Assembly (NCBI RefSeq): GCF_023055435.1
Contig: NW_025963857.1
Coordinates: 16,678,001 to 16,742,000, forward strand
Direction: 5' to 3'
DNA length: 64,000 bases
Source: Haliotis rufescens
Lineage: Eukaryota
Part shown: one piece after another, positions 1,233-60,785 of the stretch
Layout of the letters: each line of letters starts with the position of its first letter
How positions within the stretch are numbered: the stretch's first letter is position 1
The notes under the pieces: model-generated
The model's input: only the letters and a program-made list of their open reading frames with translations
What the model was told of the DNA's origin: nothing
Databases searched by the model: none
Made by a program: the position numbers and the translations under genes

Positions 1233-1493
1233 GAGTGAGTGAGCTGGGTTTAAACGCAGTATTCCAGTTACACCAGTGCATGTCAACTTGATGTGGGAGG
1301 AAAGCCTGAATTGATGCAGGTCTCAGATGTTTACCACTTTGGTGAAACCAATGAGCACAGGAATGCTGCTGACAAACGTGAAAACATAATCAAGGCAAAC
1401 CGGTATCTGAACCCACAATCATAGGTTCCAGGCATGCCCTAGGGACGCAACTCAGCACAGCAAATTGCGTCGCCTGACATGCCTTGGGACCCC
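1233..1493 (-). mobile_element. tRNA-derived SINE, family D
   Basis: Reverse complement aligns end to end with the + copy at 24442-24708 (head, gtttcaccaaagtggtaaac body, (ACTC)n tail). Confidence 0.7.
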
Positions 1494-1758
1494 TGAAGAT
1501 CTGTGGTAGAATAGGTCTTCAGCAACCCATGCTTGCTATAAAAGGCGCCTATGTTTGTTGGAAGAGGGAACTAACGGGATTGGGTGGTCAGGATCACTAG
1601 ACTTGGTTGATGCATGTCATTGTATCCCAATTACGTAGATCGATGCTCATTTTATCTAGCACTAGATTGTCTGGTCCGGACTCGATTATTTACAGACCGC
1701 CATCATATAGCTGGAATATTGCTGAGTGCGGCGTTAAACAACAAACAAACAAAACAAA
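1488..1758 (+). mobile_element. SINE family B (structured, non-tRNA head)
   Basis: gacccctgaagat...ggtcttcagcaacccatgcttg...gctggaatattgctgagtgcggcgttaaac(AAAC)n; more than 10 copies in the window. Confidence 0.85.
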
Positions 1759-7340: not shown

Positions 7341-7603
7341 CCGACAAGGTTGTAACAACAAAATCTAGCACATATTTATTTCAATTTCTACACCCCCTTG
7401 GGGACTTTAGATAGTTGGTGCTCTGTGACCATGTCTTTGATTATCCAGTGTGTTATGTCTTCTGATTGGCACAAAACTGACATCAACTAGCCAATTTAAG
7501 TGGGGCGTTGCTCATACTATGAACCACTGGTTTGTCGGTTGAAGGCTTGATTATTTAGTGTTCGTGATATAAATATATCTGGAAATCTACAACGACTTTT
7601 ACA

Positions 7604-7879
7604 GGACCCGTGAAGATTCCGAGGTAGAATAGATTTTCAGCAACACATACTTGCCGTAAAAGGCGACTATGCTTGTCCTAAAAGGCCACTAACGGGATCG
7701 GTTTGTCAAGCTCGCTGACCTGGTTGATACAGGTCATCGATTCCAATTGCGTGGATCGATGCTCATGATGTCAATCACTGGATTGTCTAATCCAGACTCG
7801 ATTATTTTACTGACCGCCGTCATATAGCTGGAATATTGCTGAGTGCGGCGTTAAACAACAAGCAAACAAGCAACAAAAA
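7604..7879 (+). mobile_element. Full-length SINE family B with 13-bp TSD
   Basis: TSD aacgacttttaca at 7591-7603 and 7880-7892 defines both ends. Confidence 0.92.
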
Positions 7880-8127
7880 AACGACTTTTACACAACATTC
7901 AATCACCAATCATGACTTGGTCCATGCGTGTCGTATCTTTCGTGCATGTCATATTGATTTTACTAAACGAGTGTTGGAATTTTTGTGTTTCCAGGGCAAG
8001 CGAGAGGGTAATACACGAGCTCTCACACGAGTTTCGTGAAATCAGTACGAGATACAAGCGAGTGTTATTATTTCTTAATTACAGATTATTTCTTAAACCT
8101 TATGTGCTCCCCCATTGGAAACAAGAC

Positions 8128-11772: not shown

Positions 11773-12085
11773 GACCCATGATGATCCGGGCTAGAATAGG
11801 CCTTCAGCAACCAATGCTTGCCGTAAAAGGCGACAGAGGCGACAGAGGCGACTAACGGGATCGGGTGGTCAGGCTCGCTGACTTGGTTGATGCATGTCAT
11901 CGTATCCCAATTTCGTGGATAGATTAATTTATTCTCAACAAACCACCCGATGTATACCATAGCAGTTGTTAAAACCTGTTTGCCAAGGTGGAGTATTCAC
12001 TGGATTGTCTGGTTCAGACTCGATTATTTACAGACCGCCGTCATATAGATGGAATATTGCTGAGTGCGGCGTTAAACAACAACCA
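11773..12085 (+). mobile_element. SINE family B with an internal insertion (about 11920-11995)
   Basis: Family-B head and tail. Confidence 0.85.
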
Positions 12086-13157
12086 ACTTGCATTTTCCCT
12101 TCCGGAGTAATGCAATTATACAACACATATAACTTGGGCAGCATGAGTTATGCGCGCACCGCATTCAGTGCTAAAATCAAATCTGCGTCTGGCTATGGAA
12201 GCTGCCTTGCCTTTCACAACCTTAGCAAGCTTAACCCTGTGGTAGACACAAACAAACATCGCTTCACTACTGCCTTGCCATGTCTTGTTCGCCAATGGTT
12301 CCACCGTCAAATGTTGACGCGTCTTCTATAATAGGCATACTCTGGCTGCAGTGGTATCTGCTGTTTTCTATCTCTGAGAGTAACGATATGAACTCCACAG
12401 TAATCAGGCCCGTACAGTATTGTTCCACTCTCTCCATCCAGAGAGAGAGAGAGAGAGAGAGCACATGTTGGAATTTAGAATTTTGATATGTTTAGATTTT
12501 AAAATATGTGCCTCCTGAAGATTTTGAATCAGTGCCATTGATGACAATGGTCCAAAAGTAACTGAGGCGACGTAAAATATTAGCTTCAATTAGGCTACAT
12601 ACGTTACCAGGATTAAAAATATAATCACTTATCTAATTAATGCAGCACATAAGCTCCGAACGTAGATGTATTTACTTCTTAATTGCACGATCGCTCTAGT
12701 TATGTGTTTCAAGATTTGCCAGCACCATCCATTACCAACAACAAGCTGAAACGCCCTTATGTGACTTAAAAAACTGTTCAAAGCGGCGTTAAACCAAACT
12801 CACCCACTCGCTCTAACAGATGCCACCAATACTGCACAGGTAACCGCTTACCGGCTAAAGGCTAAGATAATTATCTATAATCGTTGTCGGTAATTGAGTG
12901 AATTGGGTTTAGAGGCCCGTCAATGATATTACTGGAACATACAGCGAACTTAGCTTAATGTTTGAGAACAGAGCAAAGTGACAAAGGAAACTCACGAGAA
13001 CAGATATGGTACCTTCAAACGAAGGATCGTGATTAATGACAATCTGGATTCGAGCGCACAATCAGTGAATCCTGGTACAGTTAAGGAACGTAAAACTGCT
13101 AAACGAATTGCGGCGAATTGGTGTCAGTGATGGCAAACAGAGGACGGATGTCTTTAT

Positions 13158-14019: not shown

Positions 14020-14490
14020 CCCTCCATGGCCTATAGGGCGTCTGCCCAGAGAGCGGAAGGTCGGTGTTTCGATACCCGATCGCGTCATACCAAAAGACGT
14101 TAAAAAGATGGCACTTGTTGTTACCGTGCCTGGCCCCAAAGGGTGATAAAACAATTACTTTTCGCCTCGCAGTCAGAATATGTGCCTGTGTGTTAAACTG
14201 CGGCCTGGTGTGTAAGTGGGCTAGCACTATAAAACACACGCACACGCACATGCATAGTGCAATAATCTTCAACGCGACGTTAAACCCAATTTTGGGGCGT
14301 TCGGGTAGCCTAGTGGTTAAAGCGTTCGCTCGTCACGCCGAAGACCTGGGTTCGATTCCCGACATGGGTACAATGTGTGAAGCCAATTTCTGGTGTCCCC
14401 CGCCGTGATATTGCTGGGATATTGCTAAATGCGGCGTAAAATCAAACTCACTCACTCACTCACTAAACCCAATTTTAACTCACCTCACCT
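14020..14490 (+). mobile_element. SINE family C hosting a nested family-A SINE
   Basis: tRNA-like head, Meta-like core, tail split by the insertion. Confidence 0.8.
14294..14463 (+). mobile_element. tRNA-derived SINE family A, nested
   Basis: A box gtagcctagtgg, B box ggttcgattccc, (ACTC)n tail; 13-bp TSD taaacccaatttt at 14281-14293 and 14464-14476. Confidence 0.92.
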
Positions 14491-22150: not shown

Positions 22151-23024
22151 CCTGTTTGTGTAGTGTGACTCATCCCTTGTTCTTGTCGCATTGTTTCCCA
22201 TCATTTTTGAGAAACAGTAACAGCTCCCATATGCCATGTTTCCACTTCAAATCGAGGTTTATCTCAGACATGTAGTCGCGGTGCAATCAATTAACATGGA
22301 GCTAAACAAAACTGCACCAACTGCATATTTCTTTAAATAGCTAACATTCCATTTGTCTGATAAAACTAAGCATTCCCTCACTGAGAGCTCAGAACGTGTG
22401 TAGCCCTCGTATGGTGCGCACAGGGAAGGTAAAAAAAAAACATGGATACTGAAACTTCCGATCCGAGGGACTTGAGATTGAAAAAGGTACGTCTTGCAAA
22501 TCTGCATATATACGACTCCTGCCAACTCTCATTCGTCAACACTCGGAAGTTTCCGTTTACTGCAACGGACCTGTCCGGTTGACACGGCAGCATGCCAAGC
22601 ACCTTTGAACTTTGTTAAGGATTTATTTAAGCGATGAAACTGAGGAAAACTTTATTTTACTGATTGGAGATAACGTGGAAACGTCACTGAGAACTGTTTA
22701 CCTTAAAAGGTAACACCTTGGTGAACTGTCTGTGTTTGGAATAAGTAAATAGGAAATAAGTAAAATATCACAGCACTGGCAGTATATTTGGTCAAGAAGT
22801 CAAAAGGAGAGCAATAGAGAAAGTTCCGTAAGAACTTGGCGAAACTAATTCAGGTCGACGTATGATTTGTCTTCGCTAAGTTGCTCAGGTTGTGAAAGGC
22901 AAGGCAGCTTCCTTAGCCAGACGCAGACTTTGTTTTCGCACTGAATGCAGTGACCGCATAACCCATGCTGTCCAAGTTATATATGCATTGTTTTAATGCA
23001 TTACTCAGGAAGGGAAAATCCAAG

Positions 23025-23246
23025 TTTGTTTGTTGTTTAACGTCGCACTCAGCAATATTCCAGCTTTATGACGGCGGTCTGGACCAGACAATCCAGTGAC
23101 TTGCATCATGAGCATCGATTTACGCAATTGGGATACGATGACATGCACCAATCAAGTCAGCGAGCCTGACCACGCATCTCGTTAGTCTGCTCTCGCGACA
23201 AGCATGCGTTGCTGAAGACCTATTCTATCCCGGATCTTCACGGGTA
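23025..23246 (-). mobile_element. SINE family B
   Basis: Reverse complement of the family-B consensus; head ends ...cggatcttcacgggt. Confidence 0.88.
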
Positions 23247-25741: not shown

Positions 25742-25982
25742 ACCCGTAAGATCCGGGTTAGAATCGGTCTTGAGCAGCCCATACCTGTCGTAAGAGGCGA
25801 CTAACGGCATCGGGGGTCTGGCTCGCTGACTTGGTTGATGCATGTCATCGTATCCCAGTTGCGTAGGTTGATGCTCATGGTGTAAATCACTGGACTGTCT
25901 GGTCCAGACTGGATTATTTACAGGCTGCCGTCATATAGCTGGAATATTTCTGAGTGCGGCGTTAAACAACAAACAAACAAAC
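25742..25982 (+). mobile_element. SINE family B
   Basis: Full head-to-tail match with a single hairpin module. Confidence 0.88.
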
Positions 25983-30567: not shown

Positions 30568-31819
30568 CAGATGGTCATGATCGCGGTACGCCCAATGTTA
30601 AACCTGGGAAAATGTGCATATGAAGTGTAAATATATATATTTATTTAAGCGGTGGTTCCTACAAGCTACTTGTTGATGCCTCATGAAGATCCGACATTGA
30701 TGGTCTTCAGCAACCATGCTTTCGTAAATGGCGACAAAGGGCCATGTAGCTGTAATAATTCATGAGTGCGTTAAACAACAAACACACTTGTGTTGATGAT
30801 ACAAGAGAGAGCATGTACATCCCCTGTGTATCTTTGTTAGACCTCCAGATACCACATGAGTCTGGATTAGCTCCTGCTGAAGCATTTCATCATTAACCCG
30901 AATCTGTTATATGTTCATGTTCGCACATGCTTCCAAGTGCACCAATAATATCTGTTTTTCACTATAGATCCTGTGCAACAGGTGAAGTTGCTTTGTAAAG
31001 AGCAAACGCATGGATCCATTGCATGGATCAGTCTTCACTTTGGCCAATGTGGTACTAATTGATTCGTAATAGATAAGTGTTATTAAGTGCTGATTCAACC
31101 TTACATTCTTGCAATAAGCCAAGCGGTACACTATCCTATCAGTTTCATTCATGATACAAACATGTAATTTGGTAAGTTCTCTGCAACTAGGAGCGTTATA
31201 CTGTGTAATGCAGGTGCTTTCCCTGTAACATTCAGCCGTTCCTGGGAACATTTATCGCAAAGGTTACACAAGCTGGAGATGTAACAACATAAACGTTTGC
31301 ATACACTTTTTACAAACTGAATACAAATGTGATACTCTGGACTGTGTTAGTTTTACAAAGGCATTTCAGGTCTCATATATTAAAGGTTACCCAAATCTCA
31401 TGGTTGAACGTCTGAGATATATTGCTGTCTATATGCCATAGAGATAGTGTTTGCCGCATTGCTGCAAAATCACTATAGCCCCCGGATCATCCACAGAACT
31501 AGAATCGGCCAAGGACGGGCGTTGGGAACAGCTAATGACCCCGGCTGCCATATCTCTTGTGATAACAATTAACATAGGCCGTTGCCAAGGCCTTGTAGTC
31601 ATTTTTATAGACACAGATCCAACCAGCCTGTTTGTCAGACAAGTTAGTTTACCAGACTTTGTTTAAAATTGTATCTAGGAAAGTATCATTTTCGCGATCT
31701 TATATAACCACTTCGCAGGGAGCGCGAGATCGGACAGGTGTGTTTCAAGATTGGCAATCTGCCTAGACGACTTGCGACACGGGCTGTAAGGGAGACCTGT
31801 GTCAGATCCGACATCGACG

Positions 31820-35065: not shown

Positions 35066-35677
35066 AACCGAATTTTCCCAAGAAAACACCGAACTTAACA
35101 TCATTAAAATGTAATAAATACTTAATACAGTTCAATATCCTTGAACTCCAAAATTCGTCATAATTCAGCATAATTAAACGATCGAATTCCGGAAAGCAAC
35201 GTTTCCACGAAAATAGTCCAGATTACTAATAGAGAGCAGGGAGTGTTTATGTGTATATGTAAGTCCAGACTATCGAGGTTCAAATGTACACAGTGTCGCG
35301 CGTGCGGTTATTCCACAGAAACAACATGTGGCGTGGCCTTGGAAGTTGCTAGAATACACACAGTAATTCCTTCAAGTTCCGCTTTGCACTTTCAGTCTCT
35401 GATTCACTGATAAGACTATGGTCTATCTGTATGTAATTTTTCTCGGTTTGGGCTGATGCGCTCTTTGCCAGTCTGAGAGGTTAATAATAGCCCCTTGTTA
35501 TTGTGTACACGGAGGTGCTTCTTCAAGTCTTTATATGTACCGTGTTCGTCGCTGAAGGCACAGCCACAGATGTTACATGCTAACCTTGGAGCCCAAAATG
35601 CTGAATAGAAATACATGTCAAGATCCATTAAATCAAGCCACTTTGCCTGCAAACTTTATCTTTATCATTAGTATGTT

Positions 35678-35932
35678 TCTTGTTTAACGCCGCACTTAGC
35701 AATATTCCAGCTATACGACGGCGGTCTTTAAATAATCGAGTTTGGACCAGACATTCCAGGGATTTACATCATTGGCATAGATCCACGCAATTGAGATACG
35801 ATGACATGCATCAACCAAGTCAGCGAGTCTGACCACCCGATCCCTTAGGTCGCCTCTGATGACAAGCCTAGTCGCTTTTTACGGCAAGCACGGGTTGCTG
35901 AAGACCAGTTCTACCCCGAATCTTCACAGGTC
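35678..35932 (-). mobile_element. SINE family B
   Basis: Reverse complement match with a duplicated hairpin module. Confidence 0.88.
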
Positions 35933-52970: not shown

Positions 52971-53929
52971 AAATCAATCTGTTCTAATTCTACACTGTAC
53001 TGATTTGAGAGACTGAAATCTATGATACGTCTGCCCCCATAACCGAAGCCCAAAGGAGACAAATAGAGCGAATGGTATAATGTAGCAATGCCAAATACAC
53101 GTTGATACTATATTTATACTATACACCAGGTTGGGTGGTGGAGCAGTCACGCGGTTAACACGTTCGTCGAAGACACAGGTTCGATTTCTCAATAAGAAAC
53201 AATGTGTACACCCATTTTTGGTGCCATGATACTGCTGCATATTGCTTAAAGCGCGCTAAAAACCACGTTCACGCATTTGTGCAAGTCGGCGATGCATAGA
53301 TCATATTGTTCTCTCCATGAAGTTAATTCCGTTGCCCCAGCTTACAGATGACAAATGGGACTCCTTCCAATGGTATTGGTAAGATGACATGACACCTCCT
53401 GCTTCCCGGACATTGTACAGTACTAACATAGATCAAATACTGCCCAGTGTGGAGTGTGTAGTCTGTCCGTACATCCCCGAGTCTGTGTACGAGCTTCTGT
53501 GTACGAACATATAATAGAAGGGTCGACCAGATTTGTTTGTTGAGGTTCAAAAAATTATTTTCAATAACTTTGGTATTGCGAATTCTGTGTCCTCTTCCCA
53601 CCGACAATCTATAGCACGGTTCTTGCATGCAATGTAGCTAGCTTAGAGGTTTTCTCAATTTGTTTATACTGACACGTGTATTCCAGCTATTGACTTTCTT
53701 TGAAAGTGTCACTGTGATATCAATGTTTACCTTAGTACAAAGTAACTTGATACAAAGGTTTGTACTATAATGACTGAAACATGAGAGCATAACGTGTAGA
53801 CTTCATCAGATAAGGTCAGTCTTGATATACATACAAGATTATTAACGGATTACGAAATGCTTGAATCATTGTAAAATTAAATGTGTTCAAAGTCACATTG
53901 TTGGATGGTCGTGATTTATTAACTCTTGC

Positions 53930-54194
53930 ACCCGTGAAGATCCGGGGTGGAATAGGTCTTCAGCAACCCATATGCATGTCGTAAAAGGCGACTTTGCTTG
54001 TCGTAAGAGACGACTAACGGGGTCGGGTGGACAGGCTCGCTGACTTGGTTGATGCATGTCATCGTATCCCAATTTAGTGGATCGATGCTATTGATGTCAA
54101 TCACTGGATTGTCTGGTATAGACTCGATTATTTACAGACCGCCGTCATATTTGGAATTTTGCTGAGTGCGGCGTTAAACAACAAACAATCAAAC
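53930..54194 (+). mobile_element. Intronic SINE family B
   Basis: Near-consensus full-length copy. Confidence 0.9.
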
Positions 54195-54281
54195 AGTGGA
54201 CTCTGCTTTTCCCTGAGATTATAATAATGGAAAGGATTTTGTCGCCACAATTCCTTATTAAGTAACCAATAATCTCCACAG

Positions 54282-57963: not shown

Positions 57964-58135
57964 GGACCCCGTGGGGATTCCGGGTTAGACTAGTCCCCCA
58001 GCAACCTCTGCTGGTCGTAAAGGGGGACCAAATCGATCGGGGGGACAGGCTTGGTGACTTGGTTGATTGAGTGTTATCGTACCCCGACGGCGTGGGACGT
58101 TGTTCATAATATCAATAACTGGTTCACCTGGTCCT
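57964..58135 (+). mobile_element. Diverged SINE family B with compensatory stem changes
   Basis: ggaccccgtggggattccgggttagactagtcccccagcaacc... Confidence 0.75.
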
Positions 58136-60127
58136 GACCTCCCGAATTCGAACTATTCAAATTATTTGCTACCCATCAACCCCAAACCCTGGTCAGAAAT
58201 TACATACGTTTCTCGCCATTGTCCTCGTGTAAGACCCTAACATACTGAATCAAATCCAGTGGTGGTTCAAAAACAAATCTGCAAATTGCTTCGCTGCTTG
58301 GTAGTGGGCAAAATGCAGTGAAGCGAATGTACAAACGACACACTGGGTATGAACCGATATTATAGTTCCAAAGCTTCCATTTTCATTTGACACCAAACGT
58401 TTAACTTCCGATATACGGCCGCCATGATAGCTGTCGTCAAGGTAAGCGGATTAATTAAGGCGACGGTAAGAAGTATTGGTGACTTTCATACCTGATGCGT
58501 CGTTTATTCACCCTGTTCTTATATCTATCCTAACCTGGTGACTGACACAGTTCCGCTGTTGTTTGTGCTCCCATTGCATGACGGTCCCTTGGTGTTACGA
58601 GTAATGGCCACGTGTCGCGGTCACGTGTCGTGCTGGTGGCCAATCAGTGGAGTATTTCAAATTTCTGCAGTAAGATAACTTTTTGAATCACTTCCTCACT
58701 TTCTGAATGATTATAATTTGTAAGCTGTTTTTATACTTATTGCCATATTACTTTGATAATATTTGATCGTAATGATAAGAGACCATTTTTTCTATGTATA
58801 TATTATCTTTGAAAGATATTGGAAAGAATATCACTTCGTATCCACCAGTAAAAAATCTGAAAAATATCATATATTGGGCCCAATTCACAAAGTGATCGTT
58901 GCGTTACTCAAAAAACGTATGATCGTTAAGTGAAACGGGGCTCAGTATATTACGGTTGTTAAAGATTTTGTTATATGCAATGGAAAACCATACAGAAATT
59001 AGCATGTTCAGACGGCTTTCCCCCGATTTTATGTTTCTTATATGTCTTTACTTCCATTTTCAGAAGAAGTATTAGAGTGAAGTAGGGCATCCCAGTCAAG
59101 TCGGTGTCTGGTCCTGGAGTATGCCAGACGACGTTACAATCATTGAAGCATCGATTGGAGATTTTGTACATTTTGTTTCGATTAGAAAAGCTTTTCTTCC
59201 GGTTTTGGTACAGATATTTTAACTATCCCACGTTACGGCGTATGCTTCATGGTGACTTTGTTGAACGCGTCTCACTCTGCGCTCGCATTTCAGCATCTTT
59301 TGCTGAAACAGTGTCTTACGCTGAAACAGAATCTTATGCTGAAACAGTATAAAATGAGGCCATAAAGCGCGCACTTACTGTATATGTGTATGTCCAAACT
59401 GTTGACAAAATTAAGGGATATTTCATATTTGTTATTTATTTGCATATATTTATTTAAAGGCTAATTTAAGGCATTTGGTTGTTATAACAAGTGTTATATT
59501 CGCAACAGCTTGGCATAAAAAAGGGTTTGGAAATCAACCGAGGGAAGAAACCGATTCACGTGTGATTTAATATTCCTCACTGCCATTACGATTTTTACCC
59601 CGATATATTTTCTTCCATTGTACATAAATTGATATATACCATTAATTAGTAACAGCTCAGAATAACTACCCAAAGGAAAGACAAACGACAACGGCCACAC
59701 CGGAATATACTTCTTCATTGAGGGTTCATTTTGCAAGTCTGGAAATCTAAATCGCTGTGAACTGGCTCCAGTTTATATGGAGGCCCAAACTGGTTTCACA
59801 AAAACTTCAAACTGCCTCACAAACCAGTTTCGGTTCGAGTGTGGCCACGCCTGATATTTGGCAAAGTGACGGGAGAAAACGTGCTGAAAAGACTGAAAAG
59901 CGTTTACTAAAAAGTGTTAAAGAAAATTTGAAAATATTTACTTCAGATTTTCAAGTCCTTTCATTGCTGTACAGAACGGACTATGAGGCTTTAAGAGCGG
60001 TGTGTTGTTCTGTGTGTTAAAGTATATATGGTCCCTCTAGCGCCATTGTTGAAACAGCTCTTGTAATTAAAGACTTCATTAAACTACCCGCCATTCGAGT
60101 CATGTCTTTATTCCTTTCAAGGAGTTT

Positions 60128-60346
60128 TTGTTTGTTTGTCTGTTTGTTGTTAACGCCGCACTCAGCAATATTCAGTTATATAACGGCGGTCTGTACCTGA
60201 AACCTAGTGATTGACATCATGAACATCGGTCTACGCAATTGGAATACCATTCATGCATCAACCAAGTCGGCGAGCCTGACCATACGATACATTTAGTCGC
60301 CTCTTACAACAAGCGGAAGACCAATTCTGATCCGGATTTTCACGGG
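60128..60346 (-). mobile_element. SINE family B
   Basis: Reverse complement match; flanking ttc(a/g)aggagtt TSD-like repeat. Confidence 0.85.
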
Positions 60347-60785
60347 TTTCGAGGAGTTACTTGAGTTATCATAAGTAGATAACCTCGTGGGGGCCATTGT
60401 TAGAATTCGACCCCACAAAACTATCGCTTGACGACAATGTGATTTAAATGGTCAGGCCCTATGATTTGGTTGATTGTGTCACCGTATCCGACGGCGTGAG
60501 TTTTGCATGTGTTTGTGATGGGTGTCACCGGTGCAGCAGGATACGCTCACCATTTCGCGAACACTTGTTATCAGAAAGACAGTTTATTCAGTCGGAAAGG
60601 TCATATGGCCCACAGTACTGTTCAGTTTTAACATACATGAAGTCAACGTGATCTTGAACATAGCATGGTATATTTTCACCTTAGTCTGAACACATGTATT
60701 AAATACACTGCTAAAGATTTGATAACATCTTCATTGTTGGAATTCAACAAATTGATCATTAATTGATTGTCTTTGGGTGTAATGC

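What the first reader, a model, noticed from the sequence alone, without database searches (positions are those of the whole stretch)
53930..54021. SINE family B starts with a covarying pseudoknot instead of a tRNA head: candidate self-cleaving or processing RNA
Seen: near-full-length copies (1488, 7604, 11773, 23246-, 25742, 35932-, 53930, 60346-) start at almost the same point, acccgtgaag. The TSD at 7591/7880 shows nothing lies upstream, and I see no Pol III A/B boxes. The first ~90 nt pair as A(cccgt) B(gaagatc) C(gggtt) B'(ggtcttc) C'(aaccc) D(gtcg/cgac) taa A'(acggg), an H-type pseudoknot plus hairpin closed by a long-range stem. Established: R2 and RTE retrotransposons use 5' HDV-like or twister ribozymes to cut themselves out of read-through transcripts. 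Inference: this domain does the same job for a promoterless SINE. The stem order and the CUAA linker before the closing stem recall the HDV P2/P3/P1.1/P4 core without P1, but I cannot match it to a known ribozyme consensus.
Basis: partly seen in the sequence, partly recalled or inferred. Interest (0 to 1): 0.85.

Follow-up and report, generated by a model that had tools for sequence, protein, structure and literature searches.

The report
SINE with a folded LINE-derived head
This is one copy of a very abundant short retroposon whose first 72-95 bases are not a tRNA but a conserved, cloverleaf-like module that also occurs at LINE 5' ends; such 'LP-SINEs' were described in molluscs in 2016, and nothing yet shows that the module cuts itself.

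Summary
The observation largely holds. Window 53929-54196 is a full copy of a ~265-bp retroposon that makes up about 4% of a random 200-kb sample of this genome. Its copies start within 1-2 nt of the same base, target-site duplications abut that start, and no tRNA-like sequence or A/B box lies in the head.

The head folds as a four-way junction: a closing stem and three hairpins. Compensatory changes support the closing stem, stem B and the third hairpin. The signal is strong on a model-fitted alignment and only marginal on a structure-blind one. The proposed pseudoknot is three conserved G-C pairs with no covariation. The HDV comparison fails on topology, and no Rfam ribozyme matches.

The kind is not new. 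Matetovici et al. 2016 (PMC4758252) described 'LP-SINEs' in Haliotis, Littorina, oysters and scallops, whose first ~70 bp equal the 5' end of Nimb/I and RTE LINE 5' UTRs. They proposed a promoter role and already compared it with the L1Tc Pr77 promoter/ribozyme.

I found the same module in about 25 places on metagenome contigs from other hosts. One heads a two-ORF endonuclease/RT LINE. Promoter or RNA cleavage remains untested. First readers of this scan flagged the same head at least nine times elsewhere in this genome.

The parts
53929..54196 (+). Full-length copy of SINE family B, young subfamily (about 90% identical to the family consensus)
53930..53935 (+). Closing stem A, 5' strand (ACCCGT). 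The G that usually precedes it is C at 53929 in this copy
53936..53942 (+). Stem B, 5' strand (GAAGATC)
53943..53954 (+). 12-nt loop of stem B. Its core GGKTAGAAT is nearly invariant across organisms. The GGG is the proposed pseudoknot partner
53955..53961 (+). Stem B, 3' strand (GGTCTTC)
53962..53977 (+). Second hairpin (AGCA / loop with ACCC / TGCT). This copy has a 2-nt insertion in it
53978..53992 (+). Third hairpin, first copy (GTCG ... CGAC)
54000..54014 (+). Third hairpin, second copy, made by a 23-nt tandem duplication that older copies lack
54017..54024 (+). Closing stem A, 3' strand (ACGGGGTC; ACGGGATC with a bulged A in the consensus)
54025..54138 (+). Body of the SINE, of unknown origin. 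It is shared by diverged subfamilies that carry changed heads
54139..54173 (+). LINE-type 3' stem-loop (CCGCCG ... CGGCG around GGAAT[AT]TTGCT). The genome's tRNA-derived SINE family A has the same one
54174..54196 (+). Tail: TTAAAC followed by (AAAC/AACA) repeats
7606..7869 (+). Another full copy, flanked by the 13-bp TSD AACGACTTTTACA at 7591-7603 and 7880-7892, with 2 nt (GG) between the TSD and ACCCG
57968..58139 (+). Copy of a diverged subfamily. Stem B reads GGGGATT / GTCCCCC, a compensatory change relative to the main family
30670..30790 (+). Miniature relative (~115 bp) that keeps only the head and the 3' tail, with a likely TSD
1489..1753 (+). Full copy
11774..12086 (+). Full copy with an internal insertion of about 58 bp
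23024..23245 (-). Copy with the short (unduplicated) head
25743..25982 (+). Copy with the short head (GGGTT loop)
35669..35931 (-). Full copy
60135..60347 (-). Older copy with an internal deletion in the head

Best explanation
The element is an 'LP-SINE', which can also be called a bipartite non-autonomous LINE derivative. It is a non-coding retroposon built from three parts: (i) a ~72-nt module that elsewhere sits at the extreme 5' end of LINE 5' UTRs, (ii) a body of unknown origin, and (iii) a LINE-type 3' stem-loop with an (AAAC)n tail.

A LINE reverse transcriptase that recognises the tail copies it in trans. This step is inferred; the genome's tRNA-derived SINE carries the same tail.

The head is not a Pol III promoter. 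On the sense RNA it folds into a four-way junction: a 7-bp closing stem formed by the first and last bases, a 7-bp stem with a conserved 12-nt loop, and two short hairpins. Its role is to give the transcript an exact 5' end that every new copy inherits.

My preferred mechanism, which is inferred and not shown, is the published one. The module is the LINE's own 5'-terminal initiation/promoter unit for RNA polymerase II, and the RNA fold serves the transcript afterwards, in stability or protein binding. Defining the 5' end by RNA cleavage remains a live alternative.
For: Retroposon nature: TSDs, a sharp 5' end and a repeat tail. Family B covers about 4% of 200 kb of randomly chosen genome, about 3x10^5 copies or fragments by extrapolation.

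Tail shared with a classical tRNA-SINE that has perfect A and B boxes.

No tRNA or Pol III signature in the head.

The same module occurs in at least 25 places on metagenome contigs from other hosts. On L158 it lies at the start of the contig, about 800 nt upstream of ORF1, followed by an ORF2 with Exo_endo_phos and RVT_1 domains. That LINE has 20 runs of four or more T, the first 262 nt into the contig, so Pol III cannot be the module's common polymerase.

Literature: LP-SINEs of Haliotis, Littorina, Ostrea, Saccostrea and pectinids share their first ~70 bp with the 5' ends of Nimb-17_LMi, I-3_DR and RTE-9_CPB and share tails with tRNA SINEs. A promoter role was proposed (PMC4758252).

Fold: the energy-minimum structure is the four-way junction. 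Compensatory pairs: stem B GAAGAUC/GGUCUUC, GGGGAUU/GGUCCCC, GGGGACC/GGUCCUC; closing stem CCCGU/ACGGG, CUCGU/ACGAG, CUCGU/AUGAG, CCAU/AUGG; third hairpin GUCG/CGAC, GUCA/UGAC, GUCU/AGAC. G-U pairs outnumber A-C pairs 76 to 25 in the cross-organism alignment, which fits the sense strand.

The duplicated hairpin in the most successful subfamily fits a modular binding or promoter element better than a compact catalytic core.
Against: The Pol II promoter role is not tested anywhere.

There is no initiator-like motif at +1. The only TCAG(T/C) lies at +31 to +35, where initiation would lose the first 33 nt.

Compensatory changes point to selection on RNA, which a DNA promoter does not need.

The module's portability between LINE clades and phyla would be easier for an RNA that acts by itself or through a universal host enzyme.

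The homology of this head to the published LP head could not be checked base by base, because the figures and Repbase are not held.

Covariation is only marginal on the structure-blind alignment, and the fold's z-scores are weak.
Confidence: 0.6

Rival explanations
1. One reading: the head is a self-cleaving ribozyme of an undescribed class. It cuts at its own 5' edge and so frees LINE and SINE RNAs from read-through transcripts.
For: The module sits exactly at the 5' end and is conserved as both structure and sequence. It is portable between LINE clades. In RTE-9_CPB it occupies the place where other RTE families are predicted to have HDV-like ribozymes. The LINE clades that spawn 5'+3' non-autonomous derivatives are largely those with 5' ribozymes (PMC5786205). 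Unpaired nucleotides are the most conserved positions.
Against: No Rfam ribozyme matches. The HDV topology is excluded. The presumed cut site lies at the outer end of a 7-bp closing helix, far from the conserved loops in the secondary structure. The junction tolerates a 23-nt insertion in the dominant subfamily. The pseudoknot is unsupported. No class is known with this architecture.
Confidence: 0.15
2. The head is a processing signal read by a host nuclease. One possibility is a tRNA-sized four-way junction whose 7-bp closing stem is cut at its 5' end by RNase P. Another is a structure that stalls a 5'-3' exonuclease.
For: The ancestral head is 72 nt: a 7-bp terminal stem closing a four-way junction, with a possible loop-loop contact (GGG with CCC). 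The position of the 5' end relative to the stem matches the geometry of pre-tRNA processing (established knowledge, not tested here). The machinery is universal, which would explain the portability.
Against: The tRNA covariance model and ARAGORN do not recognise it. The linker lengths are the mirror image of a tRNA's: the closing stem runs straight into arm 1, not arm 3. Small-RNA libraries, which capture 5'-phosphate ends, show no pile-up at +1, though coverage is very low. RNase Z-type cutting after the stem would remove the head, yet copies keep it.
Confidence: 0.1
3. The head is a cis-acting RNA element for the retrotransposition machinery or for RNA survival. It might be a 5' protein-binding motif like that of R2, needed for second-strand steps, or a protective 5' structure. 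The 5' end itself would be set by something else.
For: Selection acts on the sense-strand RNA. Loops are invariant, as is typical of protein-binding sites. Duplication of one hairpin is tolerated or favoured. A deletion derivative keeps just the head and the tail.
Against: The module is shared by LINEs of different clades (Nimb/I and RTE), whose proteins differ. This reading does not explain why the module is always strictly terminal.
Confidence: 0.12
4. The head is a strongly diverged tRNA-derived (or other small-RNA-derived) Pol III head.
For: The loop sequence GGTTAGAAT resembles the B box GGTTCGAAT. GAAGATCCGGG matches GAAGACCCGGG of family A. The consensus has no run of four T.
Against: The B-box match at +17 has 4 mismatches, including the essential C. 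There is no A box. The similarity to family A is not significant: 140 of 2000 shuffles score as high. No Rfam small-RNA family matches. The same module heads a LINE full of T runs.
Confidence: 0.03

Closest known systems
LP-SINEs (Matetovici et al. 2016, Genome Biol Evol 8:253; PMC4758252): Lsa_2, Hdi_LP/Hmi_LP, Oco/Oed_LP, Sgl_LP, pectinid MESC SINEs
   Same: Short, TSD-flanked, non-coding retroposons of molluscs with tandem-repeat tails. They have no tRNA head. Their first ~70 bp are shared with the 5' end of LINE 5' UTRs. Body or tail is shared with tRNA-derived SINEs of the same genome.
   Different: Identity with the published head sequence could not be checked here. The paper did not analyse the head's RNA fold.
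Pr77 of trypanosomatid L1Tc/NARTc and ingi/RIME
   Same: A ~77-nt 5'-terminal module shared by autonomous LINEs and their short non-autonomous partners, and conserved where the rest of the elements differs.
   Different: Pr77 has demonstrated Pol II promoter activity and HDV-like ribozyme activity (as cited in PMC4758252). The present module has neither shown, has no sequence or topological likeness to HDV-type folds, and occurs in animals.
HDV-like ribozymes at the 5' ends of R2, RTE and other LINEs (Eickbush & Eickbush 2010; Ruminski et al. 2011, as cited in PMC5786205)
   Same: A structured RNA at the exact 5' end of non-LTR retrotransposons. The whole module stays in the downstream product.
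   Different: HDV-type folds are nested double pseudoknots in which +1 to +7 form P1 with the strand that follows P3. Here +1 to +7 form the outermost closing stem of a four-way junction. There are no Rfam hits.
Bipartite non-autonomous LINEs (Kojima 2018, PMC5786205)
   Same: Elements made of a LINE 5' end and a LINE 3' end without ORFs, probably transcribed by Pol II.
   Different: Family B has a body of unknown origin between head and tail. The head and tail may come from different LINEs; this was not resolved.
SINEU (Kojima 2015, PMC4494074)
   Same: SINEs whose non-tRNA head is also found at the 5' end of a LINE family (Tx1).
   Different: SINEU heads are U1/U2 snRNA sequences. This head matches no known small RNA.

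Membership tests
LP-SINE | Short non-coding retroposon with variable TSDs and a 3' simple-repeat tail | tested here: met
   TSDs of 7-14 bp in 21 of 58 copies, an (AAAC)n tail, ~265 bp
LP-SINE | Head not derived from tRNA, 5S or 7SL; no A/B boxes | tested here: met
LP-SINE | First ~70 bp also found at the 5' end of a LINE 5' UTR | tested here: met
   On L158 (a metagenome contig) head positions 14-75 lie at the contig start, followed by ORF1 and an endonuclease/RT ORF2. This could not be tested for a LINE of this genome because no more genome DNA could be fetched
LP-SINE | Sequence homology to the 5' 68 bp of Nimb-17_LMi / I-3_DR / RTE-9_CPB | not testable with these tools
   Repbase sequences and the paper's figures and supplements are not held
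LP-SINE | Body or tail shared with tRNA-derived SINEs of the same genome | tested here: met
   The 3' stem-loop is shared with family A
HDV-like ribozyme | Nested double pseudoknot: P1 formed by +1 to +7 with the strand directly after P3, and P2 closing over P4 | tested here: not met
   The only complement of nt 1-7 is the last strand of the domain (54017-54024). The complement of nt 8-14 lies upstream of it, at 53955-53961
HDV-like ribozyme | Match to Rfam HDV-type models | tested here: not met
   No hit at E<=10 on three heads. These models are known to be insensitive
Any self-cleaving ribozyme | Site-specific self-scission | not testable with these tools
   Needs an in-vitro transcription and cleavage assay
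Hammerhead / twister / twister-sister / pistol / hatchet / hairpin / hovlinc | Match to the family's covariance model | tested here: not met
tRNA-derived SINE (SINE2) | tRNA-like head with an A box and a B box 30-60 bp apart | tested here: not met
   Family A in the same genome meets it with 0 mismatches
   Three G-C pairs are conserved with only one-sided changes, the fourth pair is unpaired in 26 of 36 sequences, and the young subfamily has a mismatch

The most novel reading that the evidence does not exclude
The ~72-nt four-way-junction module is a new class of 5'-end-defining RNA, either a self-cleaving ribozyme or a tRNA-sized substrate for a host nuclease. It has been passed between LINE clades (Nimb/I, RTE) and many SINE families across animal phyla, and it lets promoterless retroposons be cut out of any host transcript.
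Probability: 0.2. Interest if true: 0.85.

Novelty: new member of a known kind. Interest (0 to 1): 0.42.

Why it matters
SINEs are defined by Pol III heads taken from small RNAs. LP-SINEs are the exception, and what their head does has been an open question since 2016.

This family makes up about 4% of a 1.3-Gb genome, so whatever the head does is very effective. That turns 'promoter or ribozyme?' into a short list of bench tests.

If the module proved catalytic or nuclease-guiding, it would be a new and widespread way for non-LTR retrotransposons to define their 5' ends. If it is a promoter, it is a compact internal promoter that works across phyla.

Tried and rejected
- **Rfam.** Gathering thresholds on the whole window, and E<=10 on three heads, gave only chance hits.
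- **tRNA origin.** ARAGORN found nothing. The local similarity between the head and the tRNA part of family A is not significant.
- **Pol III boxes.** None are usable.
- **Alternative pairing GAUCC/GGAUC**, suggested by RNAalifold. It is no better supported than stem A.
- **RNAalifold on a MAFFT alignment of decayed copies.** It gave a weak, different consensus of -1.9 kcal/mol. I put this down to misalignment and neutral decay.
- **RNA evidence.** Only size-selected small-RNA raw reads exist for this species. They gave 6, 114 and 15 reads on the element and no sense 5' pile-up. This says nothing about a 265-nt RNA or about 5'-OH ends. The contig runs may be DNA.
- **Finding the LINE in this genome.** I did not try to get round this. 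No LINE ORF lies downstream of any head in the 358 kb held. Fragments related to the L158 LINE occur in L013 and L006.
- **Viral-contig scan with the head pattern.** It gave four hits, which I did not inspect.
- **Full-text search for head sequence strings.** No paper holds them.
- **Bacterial promoter/terminator scan.** Irrelevant to this genome.

Full report
**What is at the coordinates**

Window 53929-54196 (+) is a full-length copy of a ~265-bp interspersed repeat. BLAST and a profile search find 18 pieces of it in the window.

The whole genome (1.33 Gb) gave over 6000 first-look candidates. In 200 kb taken at arbitrary places the family covers 4.0%, with 46 hits, 18 of them with the head. 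That extrapolates to roughly 3x10^5 copies and fragments.

**The 5' end**

Across the window and 49 other stretches, 46 of 182 profile hits begin at model position 1 and 19 at position 2. Flanks show no similarity.

The base before ACCCG is G in 41 of 58 two-ended copies. Exact TSDs of 7-14 bp were found for 21 copies: 12 end one base before ACCCG and 6 end two bases before it. So the element starts G-ACCCGUG, with 0-1 extra base at the junction. Assembly contigs of a public run lose similarity to the element at exactly these three positions (table 7).

**Anatomy**

Older copies lack a 23-nt tandem duplication that the abundant young subfamily, including the 53930 copy, carries. The ancestral head is therefore 72 nt:
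- G1-U7 pair with 65-72 (ACGGG-A-UC, with one bulged A).
- 8-14 (GAAGAUC) pair with 27-33 (GGUCUUC) around a 12-nt loop, CGGGUUAGAAUA.
- 34-46 form AGCA/UGCU around ACCCA.
- 48-62 form GUCG/CGAC around UAAGAGG.

The minimum-energy fold of a consensus-like copy is exactly this four-way junction, at -19.7 kcal/mol. It is no more stable than shuffled sequence (z = -0.44). The young form gives z = -1.9.

After the head come a body of unknown origin and a 3' stem-loop (CCGCCG...CGGCG) with TTAAAC and (AAAC)n. Forty-three profile hits start only at this tail. They belong to a classical tRNA-derived SINE, family A, which has perfect A and B boxes and carries the same stem-loop. Both families therefore presumably use the same LINE reverse transcriptase; this is inferred.

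**Not a Pol III head, and not a known RNA**

Rfam at gathering thresholds finds only the tRNA part of a family A copy. At E<=10 nothing real matches three different heads, and ARAGORN finds nothing.

There is no A box in the head. The B-box-like GGKTAGAAT in the loop has 4 mismatches, including the essential C, and the best B-box match lies at +149. Similarity to the tRNA part of family A is not significant (140 of 2000 shuffles).

**It is a known kind**

Matetovici et al. [quoted passage not shown] Their first ~70 bp are shared with the 5' end of the 5' UTRs of Nimb-17_LMi, I-3_DR and RTE-9_CPB, and they share body or tail with tRNA SINEs.

The authors suggest that the fragment is a promoter, possibly for Pol II. 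They stress that this is untested, and they point to the L1Tc/ingi 77-nt promoter/ribozyme as a parallel. They did not analyse the head's fold.

Kojima 2018 (PMC5786205) notes that LINE clades yielding 5'+3' non-autonomous derivatives are largely the clades with 5' ribozymes.

I could not compare sequences with the paper, because its figures, its supplements and Repbase are not held. The match rests on features alone.

**Independent support for the LINE link**

A scan of metagenome contigs with the conserved core (GGKTAGAAT-NN-GTCYYCAG) returned 120 stretches. About 20 of them carry the whole head, recognisable by the following ...CAGUACCC..CUUGUCGUAAGAGGCGAC....

Model R1 found 27 heads on these contigs. 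One of them, L158, has the head at the contig start (model positions 14-75). It is followed by about 740 nt of UTR, a 411-aa ORF1 and an ORF2 with Exo_endo_phos and RVT_1 domains. That LINE has 20 runs of four or more T, so Pol III cannot be what the module serves in general.

Fragments 34-37% identical to this ORF2 occur in this genome, in L013 and L006. A RNase H-bearing LINE is abundant in this genome. Earlier first-reader notes say that one does (s1-807621, s1-818218, s1-818227); these are unverified.

**Covariation**

Individual copies are decaying pseudogenes, so only differences between source lineages are informative. Such differences exist:
- Stem B reads GAAGAUC/GGUCUUC in the main family, GGGGAUU/GGUCCCC in L003:1989 (the related window 57966 copy has AGUCCCC on the 3' side), and GGGGACC/GGUCCUC, GGGGAUC/GGUCCUC and GAGGAAC/GGUCCUC in other hosts.
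- The closing stem reads CCCGU/ACGGG, CUCGU/ACGAG, CUCGU/AUGAG, CCAU/AUGG and UCCC/GGGA.
- The third hairpin reads GUCG/CGAC, GUCA/UGAC and GUCU/AGAC.

On the model-fitted alignment of the 27 foreign heads, 80.1% of cells pair against 72.0 +/- 1.1 in shuffles. The covariation score is 0.249 against 0.156 (0 of 500 shuffles), and slid controls give 0.03-0.09. That alignment leans towards the structure.

On a structure-blind MAFFT alignment of 36 heads the excess is marginal: 68.4% against 67.0% (36 of 500), and a score of 0.218 against 0.197 (23 of 500). Pair 11-32 of stem B still shows GC 13, AU 10, GU 5.

G-U pairs outnumber A-C pairs 76 to 25 in the foreign set, as expected for the sense strand.

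I read the four helices as probably real, with stem B and hairpin 3 the best supported.

Both sides are simply conserved, the fourth pair is usually unpaired, and the young subfamily has a G-A mismatch there.

**Function**

The module is strictly terminal, portable and selected as RNA. That fits three kinds of role: an initiation module, a cleavage module, or a cis-acting binding element.

Against HDV: the strand complementary to nt 1-7 is the last one of the domain, so the fold is a closed junction and not a nested double pseudoknot.

Against a compact ribozyme: the cut site would lie at the far end of a 7-bp helix, and the dominant subfamily carries a 23-nt insertion in the junction.

Against a simple DNA promoter: there are compensatory changes, and there is no initiator motif at +1.

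RNA data did not help. The only raw reads are size-selected small-RNA libraries with 6 to 114 reads on the element and no sense start at +1.

I therefore file the element as an LP-SINE. I take the published Pol II initiation-module reading as the most likely mechanism, with moderate confidence. I keep cleavage, whether by the RNA itself or by a host nuclease, at about one chance in four overall.

**Limits**

The organism was not identified.

Noticed in passing
window 14299-14460 (+); also 34128, 10867(-), 26106: tRNA-derived SINE 'family A', with perfect A and B boxes and an (ACTC)n tail. Its 3' stem-loop is the same as family B's, so the two families probably share a LINE partner. There are 31 tail-only hits in 200 kb of random genome.
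   Followed up: partly
window 30670-30790 (+): A ~115-bp miniature element made only of a family B-like head (stem B, hairpins) and the 3' tail, with a likely TSD (CTTGTTGATG / CTTGTGTTGATG). This suggests that head plus tail is the minimal mobile unit.
   Followed up: partly
L011:1672-1702 (-), i.e. consensus positions ~172-202 of family B: A discrete antisense small RNA of about 31 nt (63 reads in run X20, 9 in X21, all beginning at 1702), piRNA-like. It is the only abundant small RNA on the element.
   Followed up: no
G000:C578:2298360-2327821, C579:4466-25300, C2:11420661-11458591, C598:1456450-1469545: RNase H (PF00075) matches of one LINE-like element recur on one strand at 6.3-6.9 kb (rarely 5.5-8.5 kb) spacing. 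That pattern looks like tandem arrays of a LINE rather than dispersed copies.
   Followed up: no
L044:1400-1880 (-), L024:2100-2780 (-): Other non-coding families in this genome carry a diverged version of the same head (GGGGAUU...CGUCCCC, then CAGUACCACAU). In L044 a different body of ~480 bp follows, containing a B-box-like GGGATTCGAAC and a related tail. From memory, and not checked, the Drosophila I factor starts with CAGTACCAC, which would match the second half of this head.
   Followed up: no
L013:13-1512 (-) and L013:1501-1765 (-): A family B copy with an 11-bp TSD sits inside the N-terminal part of a LINE ORF2. That ORF2 is 34-37% identical to the ORF2 of the head-bearing metagenome LINE L158.
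   Followed up: partly
L051, L068, L113, L127, L128 (metagenome contigs OBLZ..., OCZB..., PEAW...): Host-derived contigs in public metagenome assemblies carry two or three copies each of head-bearing short repeats. The PEAW contigs (L113, L161) hold a close relative of family B, including part of its body. The hosts are unidentified.
   Followed up: partly
window 11924-11997: About 58 bp of unrelated sequence is inserted inside the family B copy at 11774-12086.
   Followed up: no
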